Below, in pieces: positions 11,608-56,033 of a stretch of DNA of 64,000 bases. The number at the start of each line of letters is the position of its first letter. Position 1 is the first letter of the stretch. Under the pieces are notes generated by a model that saw nothing but the letters and a program-made list of their open reading frames with translations, searched no databases and had not been told where the DNA came from. The position numbers and the translations under genes are program-made. The stretch lies in the IMG/VR virus record IMGVR_UViG_3300028840_001395, positions 186,001-250,000 of that record; one strand, given 5' to 3'.

Positions 11608-12114
11608 ATGAACACTCACGAAGCCTACGCCGAGGAAATCCGCCGAGGTGTCTGGGCCGACCCGAACCCCGACCGCTGCGGCTGCAAAGGAACCGGCCTG
11701 TGGGTGTCGGACTTCGACAGCTACCACGAGTGCCCGTTCCACGGCGACCCCGACATCCCCGACCCCGAGTGGGATGACGAGACCCACGGTCCCTGCACCT
11801 TCGACTGGGACGCCCACGAGCGCCGCATCTGCGTGGATGCCTACCGGCACTTCCGCGATCAGGCCGTCGAACTGGGCCTCTCCGCCGAGGTCTTCGAGGC
11901 CATCTGCCGCCGCGACCTGGGAGCGGGCGAGCACACCCCCCGCGAGTGGGTGAACGCCGCCAACGCCGCCGCCGAGGAGCTGGCCCACACCCTGGAGGAA
12001 GCCAACGCCCGCGCCGAGGGCTTCTCCTGCGCCCTGGAGCGCCGCCTCGAAGAGGAGTACGAGATCGAGATGCAGGAGTACGAGGAAGAAGTCCGAGCCA
12101 CGGGTATCCGATAG
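11608..12114 (+). CDS. Acidic Cys/His hypothetical protein
   Basis: ORF after promoter and RBS; CGC...CPFH. Confidence 0.75.
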   Translation: MNTHEAYAEEIRRGVWADPNPDRCGCKGTGLWVSDFDSYHECPFHGDPDIPDPEWDDETHGPCTFDWDAHERRICVDAYRHFRDQAVELGLSAEVFEAICRRDLGAGEHTPREWVNAANAAAEELAHTLEEANARAEGFSCALERRLEEEYEIEMQEYEEEVRATGIR

Positions 12115-12117
12115 GGG

Positions 12118-12146
12118 GCTTACTTCCGGCCCGGTGAGAGTAGTCT
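12118..12146 (+). promoter_or_regulatory. Phage motif promoter copy 9 (ligase N-half)
   Basis: GCTTAC-N17-TAGTCT then GGAGG. Confidence 0.8.
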
Positions 12147-12162
12147 GGTCACGGAGGTTTCG

Positions 12163-13302
12163 ATGGCCAAGTCCAAGATCGAGAAGCTCGCGGCCCTGAT
12201 CGCCAAGGCCAAGGACGCGTACTACAACGGGAAACCCATCATGGGTGACCCCGAGTATGACGCGCTCGAAGACGAGCTGCGGAAGCTCGACCCGAGCAAC
12301 CCCGTCCTGGCGATGGTCGGTGCAGACCCGACCGGGAGCGGCTGGCCCAAGGTCAAGCACGAGATCCCGATGGGGTCGCTCCGCAAGGCCCAGGACTCCG
12401 ACGACATGGACAAGTGGTTCTCGACGCAGAGCGTCAACACGCCGGTCTGTGTCTCCGACAAGCTCGACGGCATCAGCATCGGCCTGCGCTACGAGAAAGG
12501 CAAGCTCGTCCAGGGCTTGACGCGGGGCGACGGCGACACGGGTGAGGACATCACCAGGAACGTCATGCTGATGCAGGGCGCGGTCAAGGTGCTCCCCAAG
12601 ACGGTCAAGGGCAAGCCCCTCCCCGACGTGGTGTACGTGCGGGGCGAGGTGGTGGTCAAGAAGTCCGACTTCGCCGCCAACTTCAAGGGCGACTCCAACC
12701 CGAGGAACACCGCGAGCGGGACGGCCAAGCGCCAGAGTGACCCGAGCAAGTGCAAGCACCTGACCATCCTCGCGTACCAGTGGCTCCCGGACGGCATGGC
12801 CCCGGAGTTCAAGTGCGACGAGTTCCACGCGCTGGTCGAGGCCGGGTTCCAAACCGCCAACTTCAAGGTCTGCAAGAACGCGGCCCAGGTACAGGCCTTC
12901 TACCAGGAGTACGTGGACAAGACCCGCGACTCCCTGGACTACCTGATCGACGGGCTCGTGGTGGACATCGATGACCGGGACGTGCGCGAGGGCAAGGGCA
13001 CCACGGACGGTCGGCCCAAGGGCGCGGTGGCCTACAAGTTCCCGCACGAGAAGAAGCCGACCACGCTCCGGAACATCCGCTGGCAGGTGGGCAACTCGGG
13101 GCGCATCACCCCGGTCGCAGAGTTCGACACCGTGAACCTGGCGGGCGCGAACGTGAGCCAGGCCAGCCTCCACACGGTCGAGCGTGTCAAGAAGTTGAAA
13201 TTGTTCAAGGGATGCCGTATCCTGGTGTCGCGGCGAAATGATGTGATTCCAATGGTGGAGGCAAACCTGGATGAAAACATCAACATCAGCGACTTCGAGT
13301 AG
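12163..13302 (+). CDS. ligA: NAD-dependent DNA ligase, N-terminal half (Ia, adenylation and OB domains)
   Basis: YYNG...DPEYD, KLDG adenylation motif, LTRGDGDTGEDIT, RGEV, DGLVV, AVAYKF, WQVGNSGRITPVA, RNDVIP; stops before the Zn finger. Confidence 0.93.
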   Translation: MAKSKIEKLAALIAKAKDAYYNGKPIMGDPEYDALEDELRKLDPSNPVLAMVGADPTGSGWPKVKHEIPMGSLRKAQDSDDMDKWFSTQSVNTPVCVSDKLDGISIGLRYEKGKLVQGLTRGDGDTGEDITRNVMLMQGAVKVLPKTVKGKPLPDVVYVRGEVVVKKSDFAANFKGDSNPRNTASGTAKRQSDPSKCKHLTILAYQWLPDGMAPEFKCDEFHALVEAGFQTANFKVCKNAAQVQAFYQEYVDKTRDSLDYLIDGLVVDIDDRDVREGKGTTDGRPKGAVAYKFPHEKKPTTLRNIRWQVGNSGRITPVAEFDTVNLAGANVSQASLHTVERVKKLKLFKGCRILVSRRNDVIPMVEANLDENINISDFE

Positions 13303-14098
13303 CTATCTGGTATGCCCCGTCTGCCAGCGTAAGATGCGGTCTATCACCACACAGCACATCAAGAAGCATGGCTTTGAGGATGCGAAGTCATTCAAGAGAC
13401 ACTTCGGACTAGATTCTCTCAAGTGTGATGAGATGCGAGGACGCCAGTCCAAGTTCATGTCGTCACACAACCCCACCGCAGGGAATGGACACACCCCAAC
13501 GTCCATCAAGAAGATGAGGGAACGACGCAAGGGGAAAGGACTCGGTGTGGCCGGGAAGTACGAGAGGACTCCCGAGATACGCCTCAAGATATCGAAGGGT
13601 GTCACCCGAGCATGGGAAAAGGGGAAGAGAGGAAGAGGATGGTACGTTTACGGTCGCAAGGCTGAAAAGAAGGTATGGGTTCGGTCTTCCTGGGAAGAAC
13701 GGGTGGTGAGAGTCTTGGACTCCCATCCCTGTGTCCTTCGGTATGAGGTAGAACCCTTCCAGATTCCTTACTGGCATAACGGAAATCCGCATCGATACAC
13801 CCCTGACTTCTTGGTGATGTTGGAGGGTAACATCAAGGAACTGTGGGAGGTGAAACCACAGGAACTCCTGAATTTGCACCGTAATCCTTCCAAGATTGCT
13901 GCCTTGAATGAGTTTGCGGTAGATCACGGCATCAACACCAGGGTGGTTACTCTTGAGCACATAGAGGGGATGGAGAGACAGGTGGGAATCCAGCCGTGGA
14001 CGGGGGCTGGAGGGCCGTGGGTGAAACCGGATGACCCTGACTTCCGACCCCGAAGCCCCCGAGAACAAAAGGGCTTATCTGACGACTCAGTGGAGTAG
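13271..14098 (+). mobile_element. Free-standing homing-endonuclease-like gene (Zn finger + NUMOD3-like repeats + TnsA-N-like PD-(D/E)XK nuclease) inserted in ligA
   Basis: CPVC...H..HG; HTPTSIKKMRE and RTPEIRLKISK; RSSWE...YEVEPFQIPY...YTPDFLV...EVKP; visibly A/T-richer than flanks; GGAGG RBS inside the ligase 3' end. Confidence 0.8.
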
Positions 14099-14101
14099 TC
14101 T
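14073..14101 (+). promoter_or_regulatory. Phage motif promoter copy 10 (drives ligase C-half; overlaps endonuclease stop)
   Basis: GCTTAT-N17-TAGTCT then GAAGGAG and ATG; the TAG of the -10 box is the endonuclease stop codon. Confidence 0.8.
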
Positions 14102-14115
14102 AGGTGAAGGAGAAG

Positions 14116-14946
14116 ATGATGACCGTGTCAGCAGCGAGAGAGTATTTTGAAGCACCGACCCTCTGCCCCTCCTGCGGGGGCCAGCTCAAGCGGGACGGCG
14201 AGTACCTCATCTGCCCGAACACCGATGGCTGCGAGGCCCAGGCGACCGGCGCTATCAAGCGCTGGTGCAAGAAGATCGACGTGAAGCACGTCGGGGAGAG
14301 CCTCATCGTGGTGCTGGTCGAGGAGGGGCTGGTCAAGGACATCGCAGACCTGTACACGCTCGACCCCGCCGAGGTCGAGAACCTGACGATGGGCGACCGC
14401 CGGGTGGGCGGTACGGGTCGCAAGGCCGTGACCAACCTGCGGAACAAGATGGCCCTCCCGCTGCACGTCTTCGTCGGGAGTCTCGGCATCCCGCTCATCG
14501 GGCGCAGCATGGCCAAGACCATCGTGGACGGCGGTTTCGACAGCCTCTCGAAGATGCTCAAGGCCAAGATCTCCGAGGTCGCCGCCATCCCCGGCGTCGG
14601 CCAGAGCAAGGCCGACAGCTTCGTCAAGGGCTTCACCGCCAAGGCCGGGCTGGTCGCCAAGCTCATCTCGGTCGGCATCGTGGTGCAGAGCGCCACCGGG
14701 CCGCTCAAGGGCAAGGTCTTTTGCCTCACGGGCTTCCGCGACAGCGACCTGACCGAGGCCATCGAGCGGGCGGGTGGCACGGTCAAGTCCAGCGTGAGCA
14801 AGAAGCTGACGCACCTGGTGCTCAAGGATCCGTCCTCGACTTCGGGCAAGGCGAAGAAGGCCCGCGACTACAACAAGCAGGGCGTGGCCGACATCGAACT
14901 GATAGACCCGGACGAGGCGTGGGATCTCGCGGGAGGTCGTCCGTGA
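14116..14946 (+). CDS. ligA: NAD-dependent DNA ligase, C-terminal half (Zn finger, HhH repeats, BRCT)
   Basis: PTLCPSCG...CPNTDGC, IDVKHVGES, SLGIPLIG, IPGVG, LKGKVFCLTG...GGTVKSSVSKKLTHLV. Confidence 0.92.
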   Translation: MMTVSAAREYFEAPTLCPSCGGQLKRDGEYLICPNTDGCEAQATGAIKRWCKKIDVKHVGESLIVVLVEEGLVKDIADLYTLDPAEVENLTMGDRRVGGTGRKAVTNLRNKMALPLHVFVGSLGIPLIGRSMAKTIVDGGFDSLSKMLKAKISEVAAIPGVGQSKADSFVKGFTAKAGLVAKLISVGIVVQSATGPLKGKVFCLTGFRDSDLTEAIERAGGTVKSSVSKKLTHLVLKDPSSTSGKAKKARDYNKQGVADIELIDPDEAWDLAGGRP

Positions 14947-15185
14947 AAGCCGTCCACCGATACATCATCCTGGGCGGGAGCTACGCCGACATGGCCCACC
15001 TCCACACGCTCGCACAGAGCAGCGCGGAGGCCCTCCAGAAGTGGCGCGACCATTTCGGAGACAAGGTAGAGGGCTGGCCCGATCCCCCCGTGGACAACAT
15101 CGACACCGACCGGCCCGACCTGGCCAAACACTGGAAGGGGAACGGATACGATTACTACTACCGGGACAGGGGAGTGTCAGTGTGA
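14943..15185 (+). CDS. Small hypothetical protein
   Basis: GTGA overlap with the ligase stop. Confidence 0.55.
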   Translation: MKAVHRYIILGGSYADMAHLHTLAQSSAEALQKWRDHFGDKVEGWPDPPVDNIDTDRPDLAKHWKGNGYDYYYRDRGVSV

Positions 15186-15433
15186 GCAGCGCACGCACCA
15201 AGGTCAAGCGACTCCCGTGCGGTCTCCTGCTCGTCTACGGGCGTGACCGTCACGGTTGCCCCCACGTCGAGGTCTGCCGGGAAGACAAGAAGTACTCCCG
15301 ACCGGCATACCCCGTCGCCATAGGGCCGAGCCTCACCCTGACCTGGGGCGGCTGGTCGGCCACGGGAATCGACTACGACTCCCCGACCCGATGGGGTTTC
15401 GGGGTCGGTCGCCTGTGGGTCGAGGTGGTGTGA
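15182..15433 (+). CDS. Small hypothetical protein
   Basis: GTGA overlap. Confidence 0.5.
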   Translation: MSSARTKVKRLPCGLLLVYGRDRHGCPHVEVCREDKKYSRPAYPVAIGPSLTLTWGGWSATGIDYDSPTRWGFGVGRLWVEVV

Positions 15434-55942: not shown

Positions 55943-56033
55943 TGGTCGCTCCGACAGGAATCGAACCTGCGATGCGGGTGTCACCCCGAGCGGATTTAGA
56001 GTCCGCCTCCTTCGACCACTCGGACACGGAGCG
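55943..56033 (-). tRNA. Amber-suppressor tRNA (anticodon CUA), class II, encoded CCA
   Basis: CGCTCCG/CGGAGCG acceptor + A73 + CCA; D arm TCC-GAGTGGTCGAA-GGA; GCGGA-CTCTAAA-TCCGC; 19-nt variable arm; GCAGG-TTCGATT-CCTGT. Confidence 0.9.

What the first reader, a model, noticed from the sequence alone, without database searches (positions are those of the whole stretch)
12163..14946. NAD-dependent DNA ligase split into two genes by a homing-endonuclease insertion that supplies a promoter for the second half
Seen: the N-half (adenylation + OB) ends at RNDVIPMVEANLDENINISDFE-TAG; a TnsA-like nuclease gene follows in another frame; the C-half (Zn finger-HhH-BRCT) restarts with its own motif promoter and RBS. 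The -35 box lies in the last codons of the nuclease and the -10 TAG is its stop codon. The two halves are in the same frame (12163 and 14116 are both 1 mod 3). Known: phage Aeh1 nrdA is split by mobE and works as two polypeptides. Inference: a heterodimeric LigA, split at the OB/Zn-finger junction without splicing.
Basis: partly seen in the sequence, partly recalled or inferred. Interest (0 to 1): 0.8.

Follow-up and report, generated by a model that had tools for sequence, protein, structure and literature searches.

The report
DNA ligase split by mobile nuclease
The only DNA ligase gene of a 436-kb uncultivated phage is cut into two separately translated genes by a selfish TnsA-like nuclease gene; the same nuclease family sits at this exact spot in many related phages, which makes this a known "genes-in-pieces" arrangement produced by a nuclease type not reported in this role in the papers I could search.

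Summary
ORF 12163-13302 encodes LigA domains Ia, adenylation and OB. ORF 13271-14098, in another frame, encodes a zinc-finger plus TnsA-fold PD-(D/E)xK nuclease. ORF 14116/14119-14946 encodes the zinc finger, HhH and BRCT domains.

No intron or intein is detectable, and the three ORFs overlap or abut, which leaves no room for a ribozyme.

Comparative data support a free-standing homing endonuclease:
- All eight relatives of this subfamily whose context I fetched follow a LigA N-half at this junction. Seven also have the C-half downstream.
- Split and intact ligA alleles are interleaved on the ligase tree, needing at least 29 changes of state, 18 of them forced by well-supported branches.
- Nuclease and ligase similarities disagree between loci.
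- A low-GC3 tract (13183-14155) extends past the nuclease into both ligase ends, as a co-conversion tract would.
- More distant family members split NrdD, or sit in a split-intein PolA.

A genome-wide promoter-like motif (51 exact copies) does overlap the nuclease's last codons and its TAG stop. It is this phage lineage's own motif, not a general part of the cassette.

Both halves are under purifying selection, keep their catalytic motifs, and are predicted to dock through the native OB/zinc-finger interface. Ligase activity is untested. T5-like phages already carry LigA split at the same linker.

The parts
12117..12146 (+). Promoter-like bipartite motif (GGCTTA-N15-GAGTAGTCT) upstream of the ligase N-half. 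RBS GGAGG at 12153-12157.
12163..13302 (+). LigA N-half (379 aa): Ia domain, adenylation domain (KLDG, K100), OB fold, a 12-residue tail after VEA, and a TAG stop.
   Evidence: dN/dS 0.33 against L045.
13183..14155 (+). Compositionally foreign tract, inferred to be the mobile cassette plus its co-converted flanks. It covers the last 39 codons of the N-half, the nuclease gene and the first ~13 codons of the C-half. GC3 is about 0.6-0.7 here against 0.94-0.96 in the rest of the ligase.
   Evidence: Change-points at 13183 and 14155. GC profile. Flank signature shared by split alleles only.
13257..13261 (+). RBS (GGAGG) of the nuclease gene, embedded in the N-half codons for M-V-E-A, 9 nt before ATG 13271.
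   Evidence: The tail VEANL(D/S)EGI is conserved in the split alleles that could be scored.
13271..14098 (+). Free-standing homing-endonuclease-like gene (275 aa). It has an N-terminal C2H2 (MucR/Ros-like) zinc finger, a NUMOD3-like linker and a TnsA-fold PD-(D/E)xK nuclease. E142, D179, E193 and K195 are invariant. It ends in a TAG stop.
14072..14101 (+). Second copy of the promoter-like motif. GGCTTA (14072-14077) lies in the nuclease's last codons. GAGTAGTCT (14093-14101) contains the nuclease stop TAG (14096-14098).
   Evidence: Conserved in L045, absent in L033, L034, L036 and L041.
14107..14112 (+). RBS (AAGGAG) of the ligase C-half.
14116..14946 (+). LigA C-half (276 aa from ATG 14116, or 275 aa from ATG 14119): Cys4 zinc finger, HhH domain and BRCT. 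Its TGA stop overlaps the GTG start of the next ORF.
   Evidence: dN/dS 0.27 against L045.

Best explanation
A free-standing homing-endonuclease gene has been copied into the phage's single ligA gene, at the DNA that encodes the linker between the OB fold and the zinc finger. The endonuclease has a zinc finger, a NUMOD3-like linker and a TnsA-fold PD-(D/E)xK nuclease domain.

Inferred mobility. During co-infection the nuclease cuts ligA alleles that lack it. Repair from the nuclease-bearing genome then copies in the gene together with about 90 nt of upstream and about 60 nt of downstream ligase sequence.

Inferred role of the flanks. Those flanks carry what makes the break tolerable:
- a short new tail and stop codon for the N-half;
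- the nuclease's own RBS and ATG, hidden in that tail;
- an RBS and ATG for the C-half.

In this phage lineage the last 27 nt of the nuclease gene also form a copy of the phage's own promoter-like motif. Both ligase halves therefore sit behind the same kind of element.

Inferred product. No RNA or protein splicing occurs. The cell makes two polypeptides, Ia-NTase-OB (379 aa) and Zn-HhH-BRCT (about 275 aa). They reassemble non-covalently through the native OB/zinc-finger interface, and around DNA, to give a two-subunit NAD+-dependent ligase.

Shown here: gene anatomy, domain content, motif copies, presence/absence polymorphism, phylogenetic discordance, compositional tract, purifying selection.
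Inferred: nuclease cleavage specificity, promoter activity, subunit association and ligase activity.
For: Anatomy and domains.

No splicing element:
- No intron family in an E<=10 Rfam scan of 12000-15200.
- None at gathering score in 10 related loci.

Nuclease identity:
- The PD..ExK residues are invariant in 40 homologues.
- AF2 model with pLDDT 89; best PDB fold matches are TnsA 1t0f/1f1z, probability 1.0.
- Profile hits to CAST TnsA (8e-7) and T7 endonuclease I (1e-3).

Same site in relatives:
- All eight relatives of this nuclease subfamily whose context I fetched (36-72% identity) follow a LigA N-half at this junction, in otherwise different neighbourhoods. Seven also have the C-half downstream; L043 shows none in the 1.9 kb of contig that follows.

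Gain and loss:
- The close syntenic relative L047 has an intact 652-aa ligA.
- On a tree of 120 N-halves, built without the junction, the split/intact state needs at least 29 changes. At least 18 are forced by starred branches.

Discordance:
- W against L045: ligase 82% and 92% identical, nuclease 54-56%.
- W against L033: ligase 44-51%, nuclease 64%.

Co-conversion signature:
- GC3 is 0.93 / 0.62 / 0.91 for N-half, nuclease and C-half.
- Change-points fall at 13183 and 14155.
- In 11 split/intact pairs (two share one intact partner) the flank is less conserved than the body in all 11. The split alleles share a common flank type.

Wider family behaves like homing endonucleases:
- A member sits between two NrdD pieces.
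- A member is fused behind an intein N-part in a fractured PolA.
- Many members carry NUMOD3 or ROS_MUCR domains.

Ligase still needed and maintained:
- One NAD-ligase adenylation-domain match and no ATP-ligase (PF01068) match in the genome.
- dN/dS 0.33 and 0.27 for the halves, 0.14 for the nuclease.
- Docking score ipSAE 0.66 against 0.00 for the best of 3 controls. This mark was reached by 51 of 78 solved complexes and 2 of 108 mismatched pairs. The interface is OB residues 305-351 with C-half residues 7-48.

Precedent: about 600 T5-like phage records carry LigA subunits A and B split at the same linker.

Motif statistics.
Against: - No transcript data: no RNA run was listed. Promoter use and the absence of splicing are not shown directly.
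- No biochemical evidence that the halves associate or ligate.
- The docking score may simply reflect the model's memory of intact LigA structures.
- The nuclease's target and activity are untested.
- NUMOD3 is only weakly detectable in this particular protein (12 bits).
- The high-GC3 background depresses dS, so the dN/dS values are rough.
- Nuclease GC3 tracks the local genome in most other loci. Many insertions are therefore old, and part of the pattern is vertical inheritance plus loss.
- The promoter-like motif could be some other gene-start-associated element.
Confidence: 0.78

Rival explanations
1. The intervening sequence is a self-splicing intron or an intein carrying the nuclease, so a single-chain LigA is restored after splicing.
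For: Homing endonucleases often live in group I introns or inteins. The two ligase halves are in the same frame. A relative of this nuclease is associated with a split intein in PolA.
Against: - No intron family in an E<=10 Rfam scan, and none at gathering score in 10 related loci.
- The N-half stop lies inside the nuclease ORF, and only 17-20 nt separate the nuclease stop from the C-half ATG. No non-coding sequence is left for a ribozyme core.
- No significant RNA structure at the 5' junction, z = -0.7.
- The nuclease is out of frame with the ligase, and no Intein_splicing or Hint domain was found in any of the three ORFs.
- The tails are only about 12 and 10 residues long.
- The C-half has its own RBS, ATG and promoter-like motif.
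Confidence: 0.03
2. The ligase was inactivated by the insertion, and the two ORFs are decaying pseudogene fragments.
For: A break inside an enzyme usually inactivates it. From memory, and not checked here, isolated LigA fragments lack nick-joining activity on their own.
Against: - All catalytic and structural motifs are intact.
- dN/dS is 0.27-0.33, like the comparison with an intact allele (0.27-0.39).
- 55 of the 120 nearest N-half homologues are of split length. The 41 whose junction could be scored end in the same conserved tail.
- It is the only ligase match in a 436-kb genome.
- T5-like lytic phages keep the same split.
- Expression signals are conserved before each half.
Confidence: 0.05
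3. The nuclease is not selfish. It is a domesticated partner of the ligase, for example a T4 gp4-like head-completion or repair nuclease, kept in a three-gene operon and inherited vertically.
For: - PHROG hits of the nuclease core to 'head closure' families (phrog_218, 1e-17), which match the T4 gp4-type TnsA-fold nuclease (PMC7824862).
- The nuclease is under purifying selection, dN/dS 0.14.
- Its association with ligA is strict within this subfamily.
Against: - Split and intact states are interleaved on the ligase tree.
- Nuclease and ligase similarities are discordant.
- Two nuclease subtypes occupy the same site in ligases that are 82-92% identical.
- The flanks show a co-conversion signature.
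- Relatives split NrdD and a split-intein PolA.
- The sequence-specific DNA-binding modules are typical of homing endonucleases.
- The gene does not lie among head or neck genes.
Confidence: 0.07
4. The element is part of a Tn7-like transposon, with TnsA acting as a transposase subunit.
For: The Pfam and fold matches are to TnsA.
Against: - No rve/TnsB-type transposase match anywhere in the genome.
- The insert holds one gene only.
- The TnsA C-terminal domain is replaced here by N-terminal zinc-finger and NUMOD3-like modules.
Confidence: 0.01

Closest known systems
Aeromonas phage Aeh1 nrdA split by mobE (Friedrich et al. 2007, PNAS 104:6176; cited in PMC3326045 and PMC2677866)
   Same: A free-standing homing-endonuclease gene inserted inside an essential DNA-metabolism gene of a phage. 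Two separately translated halves with no splicing. In Aeh1 the halves reassemble into an active enzyme.
   Different: The host gene is a ribonucleotide reductase and the endonuclease is HNH-type. Here the host gene is LigA and the nuclease has a TnsA fold. Activity of the split enzyme is untested here.
'Fractured genes' of marine metagenomes (Dassa et al. 2009, PMC2677866)
   Same: - Phage DNA-synthesis and repair genes broken by free-standing endonuclease genes.
- Extra residues next to the break point in the intein-less SbcD-like case.
[quoted passage not shown]
- A relative of the present nuclease sits in just such a split-intein PolA locus (L050).
   Different: Most of those loci rely on split inteins for protein trans-splicing, and their endonucleases are GIY-YIG or Vsr-like. 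The LigA split here has no intein parts. The nuclease family is a different branch of the PD-(D/E)xK fold.
T5-like phages (Demerecviridae): 'NAD-dependent DNA ligase subunit A / subunit B'
   Same: LigA is divided at the same OB/zinc-finger linker into genes of about 320 and 250 aa. The split is conserved in about 600 records. PHROGs holds separate families for each half.
   Different: No nuclease gene lies between the halves, only a gap of about 200 bp. The tails differ and there is no VEANLDEGI tail. It is unknown whether that split began with a since-lost endonuclease gene.
Tn7 TnsA / T4 gp4 head-completion nuclease (TnsA-fold PD-(D/E)xK)
   Same: Catalytic fold and the E...PD...ExK residues.
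   Different: No transposase partners. Not in a head gene cluster. Carries N-terminal zinc-finger and NUMOD3-like DNA-binding modules, and behaves as a mobile, site-specific insert.
PD-(D/E)xK-fold homing endonucleases I-Ssp6803I and I-Bth0305I (PMC3424549, PMC3239194)
   Same: A restriction-enzyme-like fold used for homing. I-Bth0305I relatives also carry NUMOD3 and occur free-standing, in introns and in fractured genes.
   Different: Different Pfam families (PF11645; Vsr-like EDxHD) and different active-site signatures. Neither appeared among the significant sequence or fold matches of this protein.

Membership tests
NAD+-dependent DNA ligase (LigA) | Ia domain, and adenylation domain with the KxDG lysine and motifs III-V | tested here: met
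   PF01653 at 2e-49. KLDG (K100), RGE, DGLV and YKF present. YY and EYD of domain Ia present. The Nlig-Ia Pfam family is recorded for the window's own N-half and its homologues.
NAD+-dependent DNA ligase (LigA) | OB fold, Cys4 zinc finger, HhH and BRCT domains on one polypeptide | tested here: not met
   All four domains are present, but on two polypeptides. OB is on the N-half. CPSC...CPNTDGC, HhH and BRCT are on the C-half. This is a two-gene version of LigA.
NAD+-dependent DNA ligase (LigA) | NAD+-dependent nick sealing | not testable with these tools
   Indirect support only: purifying selection, sole ligase in the genome, and predicted docking at ipSAE 0.66 against a best control of 0.00 (51 of 78 solved complexes and 2 of 108 mismatches reach the mark).
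Free-standing homing endonuclease | Intact nuclease active site plus separate DNA-binding modules | tested here: met
   E142, D179, E193 and K195 are invariant. The C2H2 finger is conserved. NUMOD3 is weak here but above the Pfam cut-off in relatives. ROS_MUCR is present in one relative.
Free-standing homing endonuclease | Presence/absence polymorphism at one site among close relatives of the host gene | tested here: met
   L047 is intact while W and L045 are split. At least 29 state changes on the 120-sequence tree, at least 18 of them forced.
Free-standing homing endonuclease | Endonuclease phylogeny discordant with the host gene | tested here: met
   Pairwise identity matrices. Nucleotide identity profile of W against L045. 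No formal tree-topology test was run.
Free-standing homing endonuclease | Co-conversion of flanking host-gene sequence | tested here: met
   GC3 change-points at 13183 and 14155 lie outside the nuclease ORF. The split alleles share a flank type, and the flank is less conserved than the body in 11 split/intact pairs.
Free-standing homing endonuclease | Site-specific cleavage of the endonuclease-free allele, and preferential inheritance in mixed infection | not testable with these tools
   Needs protein and phage experiments.
Group I or group II intron | Ribozyme core detectable, and non-coding sequence flanking the ORF | tested here: not met
   No hit at E<=10 in the window region. None at gathering score in 10 loci. 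The ORFs overlap or abut.
Intein or split intein | In-frame Hint/splicing blocks at the break point | tested here: not met
   No Intein_splicing or Hint match in any of the three ORFs. The tails are only about 10-12 residues. The relative P0321 does have these blocks, which shows the scan can find them.
Tn7-like transposon (TnsA as transposase subunit) | TnsB (rve) and TnsC partners, and transposon ends | tested here: not met
   No rve match in the whole genome. The insert has one gene. TnsC and transposon ends were not searched for.

The most novel reading that the evidence does not exclude
The TnsA-fold nuclease defines a homing-endonuclease lineage that I found described nowhere in the searchable literature. 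It travels as a 'ready-made fracture cassette'. The co-converted ligase flanks carry the new stop, the nuclease's RBS and start hidden in ligase codons, and the restart signals for the second half. Each invasion would therefore convert a one-chain LigA into a working two-subunit enzyme at once.

This would explain why 55 of the 120 nearest N-half homologues are of split length. It also raises the possibility that the long-annotated T5 split ligase is a relic of the same process. The wider family is large: about 4,300 cluster representatives at E<=1e-10. It would then be a major, overlooked agent of gene fracturing in phages, also acting on NrdD and PolA.
Probability: 0.45. Interest if true: 0.7.

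Novelty: new variant of a known kind. Interest (0 to 1): 0.6.

Why it matters
- It adds a well-documented natural case in which an essential multi-domain replication enzyme is broken at an interdomain linker by a selfish gene and apparently keeps working. The comparative record of repeated gain and loss is unusually rich.
- It points to a large TnsA-fold nuclease family with NUMOD3 or zinc-finger modules as homing endonucleases. I found no paper in the searchable library that describes it in this role. Such enzymes are of interest as long-target-site nucleases.
- It offers an origin hypothesis for the two-subunit ligase of T5-like phages.
- It gives a natural split point for engineering two-piece NAD+ ligases.
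- For annotation, 'LigA N-terminal fragment' and 'BRCT/HhH protein' calls in huge phages should be read as two subunits of one enzyme, not as pseudogenes.

Tried and rejected
- GenBank phage records. Megablast of the whole region and tblastn of the nuclease found nothing. The nuclease pattern scan of IMG/VR also found nothing. Relatives came only from the large metagenome protein collections.
- Introns. Rfam E-value scan of 12000-15200, and gathering scan of 10 loci: no intron or other meaningful RNA family.
- RNA structure. Folding of the N-half tail and nuclease start was no better than shuffles, z = -0.7.
- Transcripts. No RNA sequencing run was listed, so splicing and transcription starts could not be examined.
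- DNA runs. Laying them confirmed the arrangement but gave only weak, short-sided joints (side 28 or less) that might be intact alleles. I did not rely on them.
- Generic sigma-70 scan. It did not detect the phage motif. It found only a weak TTGAAA-17-TATCCT at 13195-13223.
- TAG recoding. Considered because a tRNA(CUA) is encoded in the window and both the N-half and the nuclease stop at TAG. There are only 16 in-frame TAGs flanked by coding-like GC3, against 8 for TGA and 2 for TAA. Read-through would add only 10 and 2 residues. Rejected as relevant to the split.
- Tn7-type transposon reading: rejected, no rve match.
- Literature. Searches for a described TnsA-like homing endonuclease, or for a described nuclease-split LigA, returned nothing specific.
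Full report
**Source.** The window is bases 186001-250000 of a 435,804-bp IMG/VR virus record. The record has direct terminal repeats, is rated 100% complete, and has 62% GC. It is an uncultivated huge phage. The same DNA is held in sediment and seawater metagenome runs.

**Observation.**
- Three consecutive + strand ORFs are present exactly as described.
- ORF 12163-13302 (379 aa) matches DNA_ligase_aden (2e-49) and DNA_ligase_OB (1e-20). It carries KLDG, RGE, DGLV, YKF and the Ia-domain YY/EYD residues.
- ORF 13271-14098 (275 aa) is in another frame and overlaps the first by 32 nt. It matches Tn7_TnsA-like_N (8e-13).
- The third ORF, ending at 14946, matches HhH and BRCT and has a Cys4 zinc finger.
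- Its likely start is ATG 14116 or 14119, behind AAGGAG at 14107-14112. The GTG at 14104 listed by the ORF finder lies inside the upstream motif and has no RBS.
- Two runs from different studies each hold a contig identical over 11900-15200, though either may be the source of this record.

**Not an intron or an intein.**
- An Rfam scan at E<=10 finds no intron family in 12000-15200. None reaches gathering score in ten related loci.
- There is no room for a ribozyme. The N-half stop lies inside the nuclease ORF, and 17-20 nt separate the nuclease stop from the C-half ATG.
- The 5' junction has no unusual RNA structure.
- The nuclease is out of frame with the ligase. No Hint or intein domain is found here, although the same scan finds one in a relative.

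**The nuclease.**
- Forty homologues share an invariant S..E, E, Y.PD and E.K pattern, the PD-(D/E)xK signature. They also share a conserved C-x2-C...H-x3-H finger and a basic RKGKG...GKYERTPEIR linker.
- An AlphaFold2 model (pLDDT 89) matches TnsA structures best, with probability 1.0. A profile search of PDB sequences finds CAST TnsA (8e-7), T7 endonuclease I (1e-3) and Tn7 TnsA (9e-3).
- NUMOD3 is weak in this protein. It is above the Pfam cut-off in distant members, and one member has a ROS/MucR finger.
- The genome has no rve-type transposase, so this is not a Tn7-like element.
- PHROG 'head closure' hits reflect the T4 gp4-type nuclease, which shares the TnsA fold (PMC7824862).

**Evidence that it is a mobile homing element.**
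1. *Same site in relatives.*
   - All eight relatives of this nuclease subfamily whose genomic context I fetched (36-72% identical) follow a LigA N-half ending at this junction. The gene neighbourhoods are otherwise different.
   - In seven of them the Zn-HhH-BRCT half lies downstream: directly after the nuclease in six, after two extra ORFs in L038.
   - L043 shows no C-half in the 1.9 kb of contig that follows.
2. *Intact relatives exist.*
   - The syntenic relative L047, 77-80% identical in ligase, has an uninterrupted 652-aa ligA.
   - Of the 120 best N-half homologues, 55 are of split length and 65 are full length.
   - The 41 short ones whose junction could be scored end in DVIP(M/R)VEANL(D/S)EGI....
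3. *Interleaved states.* On a maximum-likelihood tree of those 120 sequences, built without the junction region, the split/intact state needs at least 29 changes. At least 18 are forced by well-supported branches.
4. *Discordant similarities*.
   - The window's ligase is closest to L045 (82% and 92%), but their nucleases are only 54-56% identical and belong to different subtypes.
   - The window's nuclease is closest to those of L032 (73%) and L033 (64%), whose ligases are 61-70% and 44-51% identical.
5. *Foreign composition.*
   - GC3 is 0.93 in the N-half, 0.62 in the nuclease and 0.91 in the C-half.
   - Change-points at 13183 and 14155 show that the foreign tract includes the last 39 codons of the N-half and the first ~13 codons of the C-half.
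6. *Shared flank.*
   - In 11 split/intact pairs (two share one intact partner) the ligase body is 65-86% identical, but the flank before the break is only 33-67% identical.
   - The split alleles share one flank type: ASLH/A..V..L, a shorter loop, then KLFxGCRILVSRRNDVIP. This is what co-conversion during double-strand-break repair produces.
7. *Other targets.*
   - More distant family members sit between two NrdD pieces.
   - One is fused behind an intein N-part in a fractured PolA gene.
   - One lies between unrelated genes, near a GIY-YIG/NUMOD3 gene.
   - The family is large: 4,303 cluster representatives at E<=1e-10.

**Expression signals.**
- The nuclease RBS (GGAGG, 13257-13261) and its ATG (13271) are written inside the N-half codons for MVEANLDE. 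This explains why that tail is conserved in split alleles.
- The genome carries a bipartite motif, GGCTTA-N15-GAGTAGTCT, usually continuing AGGTG. There are 51 exact copies of the 9-mer.
  - 49 of 51 have the upstream box.
  - 42 of 51 are followed by an RBS, a start codon and an ORF within 70 nt, against 22% for random positions. The modal distance is 15-19 nt.
  - Orientation follows the downstream gene in the copies inspected, including divergent pairs in intergenic regions.
- One copy precedes the N-half (12117-12146). One overlaps the nuclease's last nine codons and its stop (14072-14101), 14-17 nt before the C-half ATG.
- The same motif precedes ligA in L047 and L045, and precedes the C-half in L045. 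L032 has a degenerate version at that place. L033, L034, L036 and L041 have none, and their nuclease and C-half ORFs overlap.
- The motif is therefore the promoter-like consensus of this phage lineage, placed inside the inserted tract. It is not a universal part of the cassette. That it is a promoter is inferred from its geometry and position.

**Is the split ligase functional?**
- It is the only NAD-ligase adenylation-domain match in the genome, and there is no ATP-dependent ligase match.
- dN/dS between the two closest split alleles is 0.33 (N-half) and 0.27 (C-half). That is similar to the comparison with the intact allele, 0.39 and 0.27. The nuclease gives 0.14.
- A two-chain structure prediction scored ipSAE 0.66 against 0.00 for the best of three controls.
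  - This mark was reached by 51 of 78 solved complexes and 2 of 108 mismatched pairs.
  - The contacts lie between OB residues 305-351 and C-half residues 7-48, that is, the zinc finger and the conserved REYF head.
  - This is the native intramolecular interface, so the score may come from the model's memory of intact LigA. It shows likeness, not binding.
- T5-like phages provide a natural precedent. About 600 records annotate LigA subunits A and B split at the same linker with a ~200-bp gap and no nuclease. PHROGs has separate families for the two halves (PMC3326045).

**Comparison with the literature.**
- The arrangement belongs with the 'genes-in-pieces' nrdA of phage Aeh1 (Friedrich et al. 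2007, as cited) and the 'fractured genes' of Dassa et al. 2009 (PMC2677866).
- The endonucleases described there are HNH, GIY-YIG or Vsr-like. The PD-(D/E)xK survey lists PF08722 as a transposase only (PMC3424549).
- My searches of the paper library found no description of a TnsA-like homing endonuclease or of a nuclease-split LigA. Absence from that library is not proof of absence.

**Verdict.**
- Two refinements apply. The promoter-like element is the resident lineage's own motif. The mobile unit is larger than the nuclease ORF, because it includes both ligase ends.
- Cleavage specificity, promoter activity and two-subunit ligase activity remain inferred.

Noticed in passing
window 55943-56033 (- strand): A 91-nt tRNA with anticodon CUA, which reads the amber codon TAG. 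It has a long variable arm and an encoded CCA end; ARAGORN labels it tRNA-Pyl. Both the ligase N-half and the nuclease stop at TAG. Read-through would add only 10 and 2 residues. I found no sign of genome-wide TAG recoding: 16 candidate in-frame TAGs, against 8 for TGA and 2 for TAA.
   Followed up: partly
whole genome; in the window e.g. 11461(-)/11578(+), 44341(-)/44432(+), 51294(-)/51348(+): A phage-specific promoter-like motif, GGCTTA-N15-GAGTAGTCT(AGGTG), with 51 exact copies. It is often found in back-to-back divergent pairs, and its upstream box often overlaps the TAG stop of the preceding gene. The first hexamer is not sigma-70-like, which might point to a phage-specified or alternative sigma factor.
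   Followed up: partly
L039 3681-4956 and L040 (metagenome contigs): A 314-aa family member, 34% identical and carrying NUMOD3, sits between two pieces of the anaerobic ribonucleotide reductase NrdD (509 and 157 aa). A 320-nt gap lies upstream of it. No Rfam intron reached gathering score.
   Followed up: partly
L050 1704-6456: A fractured DNA polymerase A. A 1227-aa ORF carries an intein N-terminal splicing domain followed by the TnsA-like nuclease. It overlaps a 360-aa ORF with a faint intein C-part plus DNA_pol_A. This resembles the split-intein 'fractured gene' arrangement, with this nuclease family inside it.
   Followed up: partly
L038 2988-5613; L043 4771-6605: Variants of the ligase locus. 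In L038 three extra ORFs (338, 145 and 122 aa) accompany the nuclease between the ligase halves. In L043 the N-half and nuclease are followed by an 83-aa ORF and an Imm_superinfect gene, with no C-half in the remaining 1.9 kb of contig.
   Followed up: no
L002 3928-4126 (Klebsiella phage KpGranit) and ~600 T5-like records: T5-like phages have LigA split at the same OB/zinc-finger linker, with a conserved ~200-bp gap and no nuclease gene. Their N-half shares the 'GC' (not 'GD') residue pair before the last OB strand with the cassette-type flank. This may be a relic of a lost endonuclease gene.
   Followed up: partly
window 13195-13223: A sigma-70-like hexamer pair, TTGAAA-17-TATCCT, lies inside the co-converted N-half flank about 50 nt upstream of the nuclease ATG. 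It might be the nuclease's own promoter. It is only a weak consensus match: 1 found against 0.6 expected.
   Followed up: no
L034 7692-8918: In the ~500-kb relatives that hold a split ligase (records of 527,654 and 497,091 bp), the nearby DNA polymerase A gene (1399 aa) carries a weak LAGLIDADG_3 hit between two DNA_pol_A matches. This suggests an intein and a second mobile element in the replication module.
   Followed up: no
run X5 (microbial mat metagenome), laid on window 11900-15200: A relative carrying the L045-type cassette is present at a word depth of about 716. It matches the ligase parts at roughly 88% identity but not the window's nuclease, and its loose ends match L045 sequence.
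   Followed up: no
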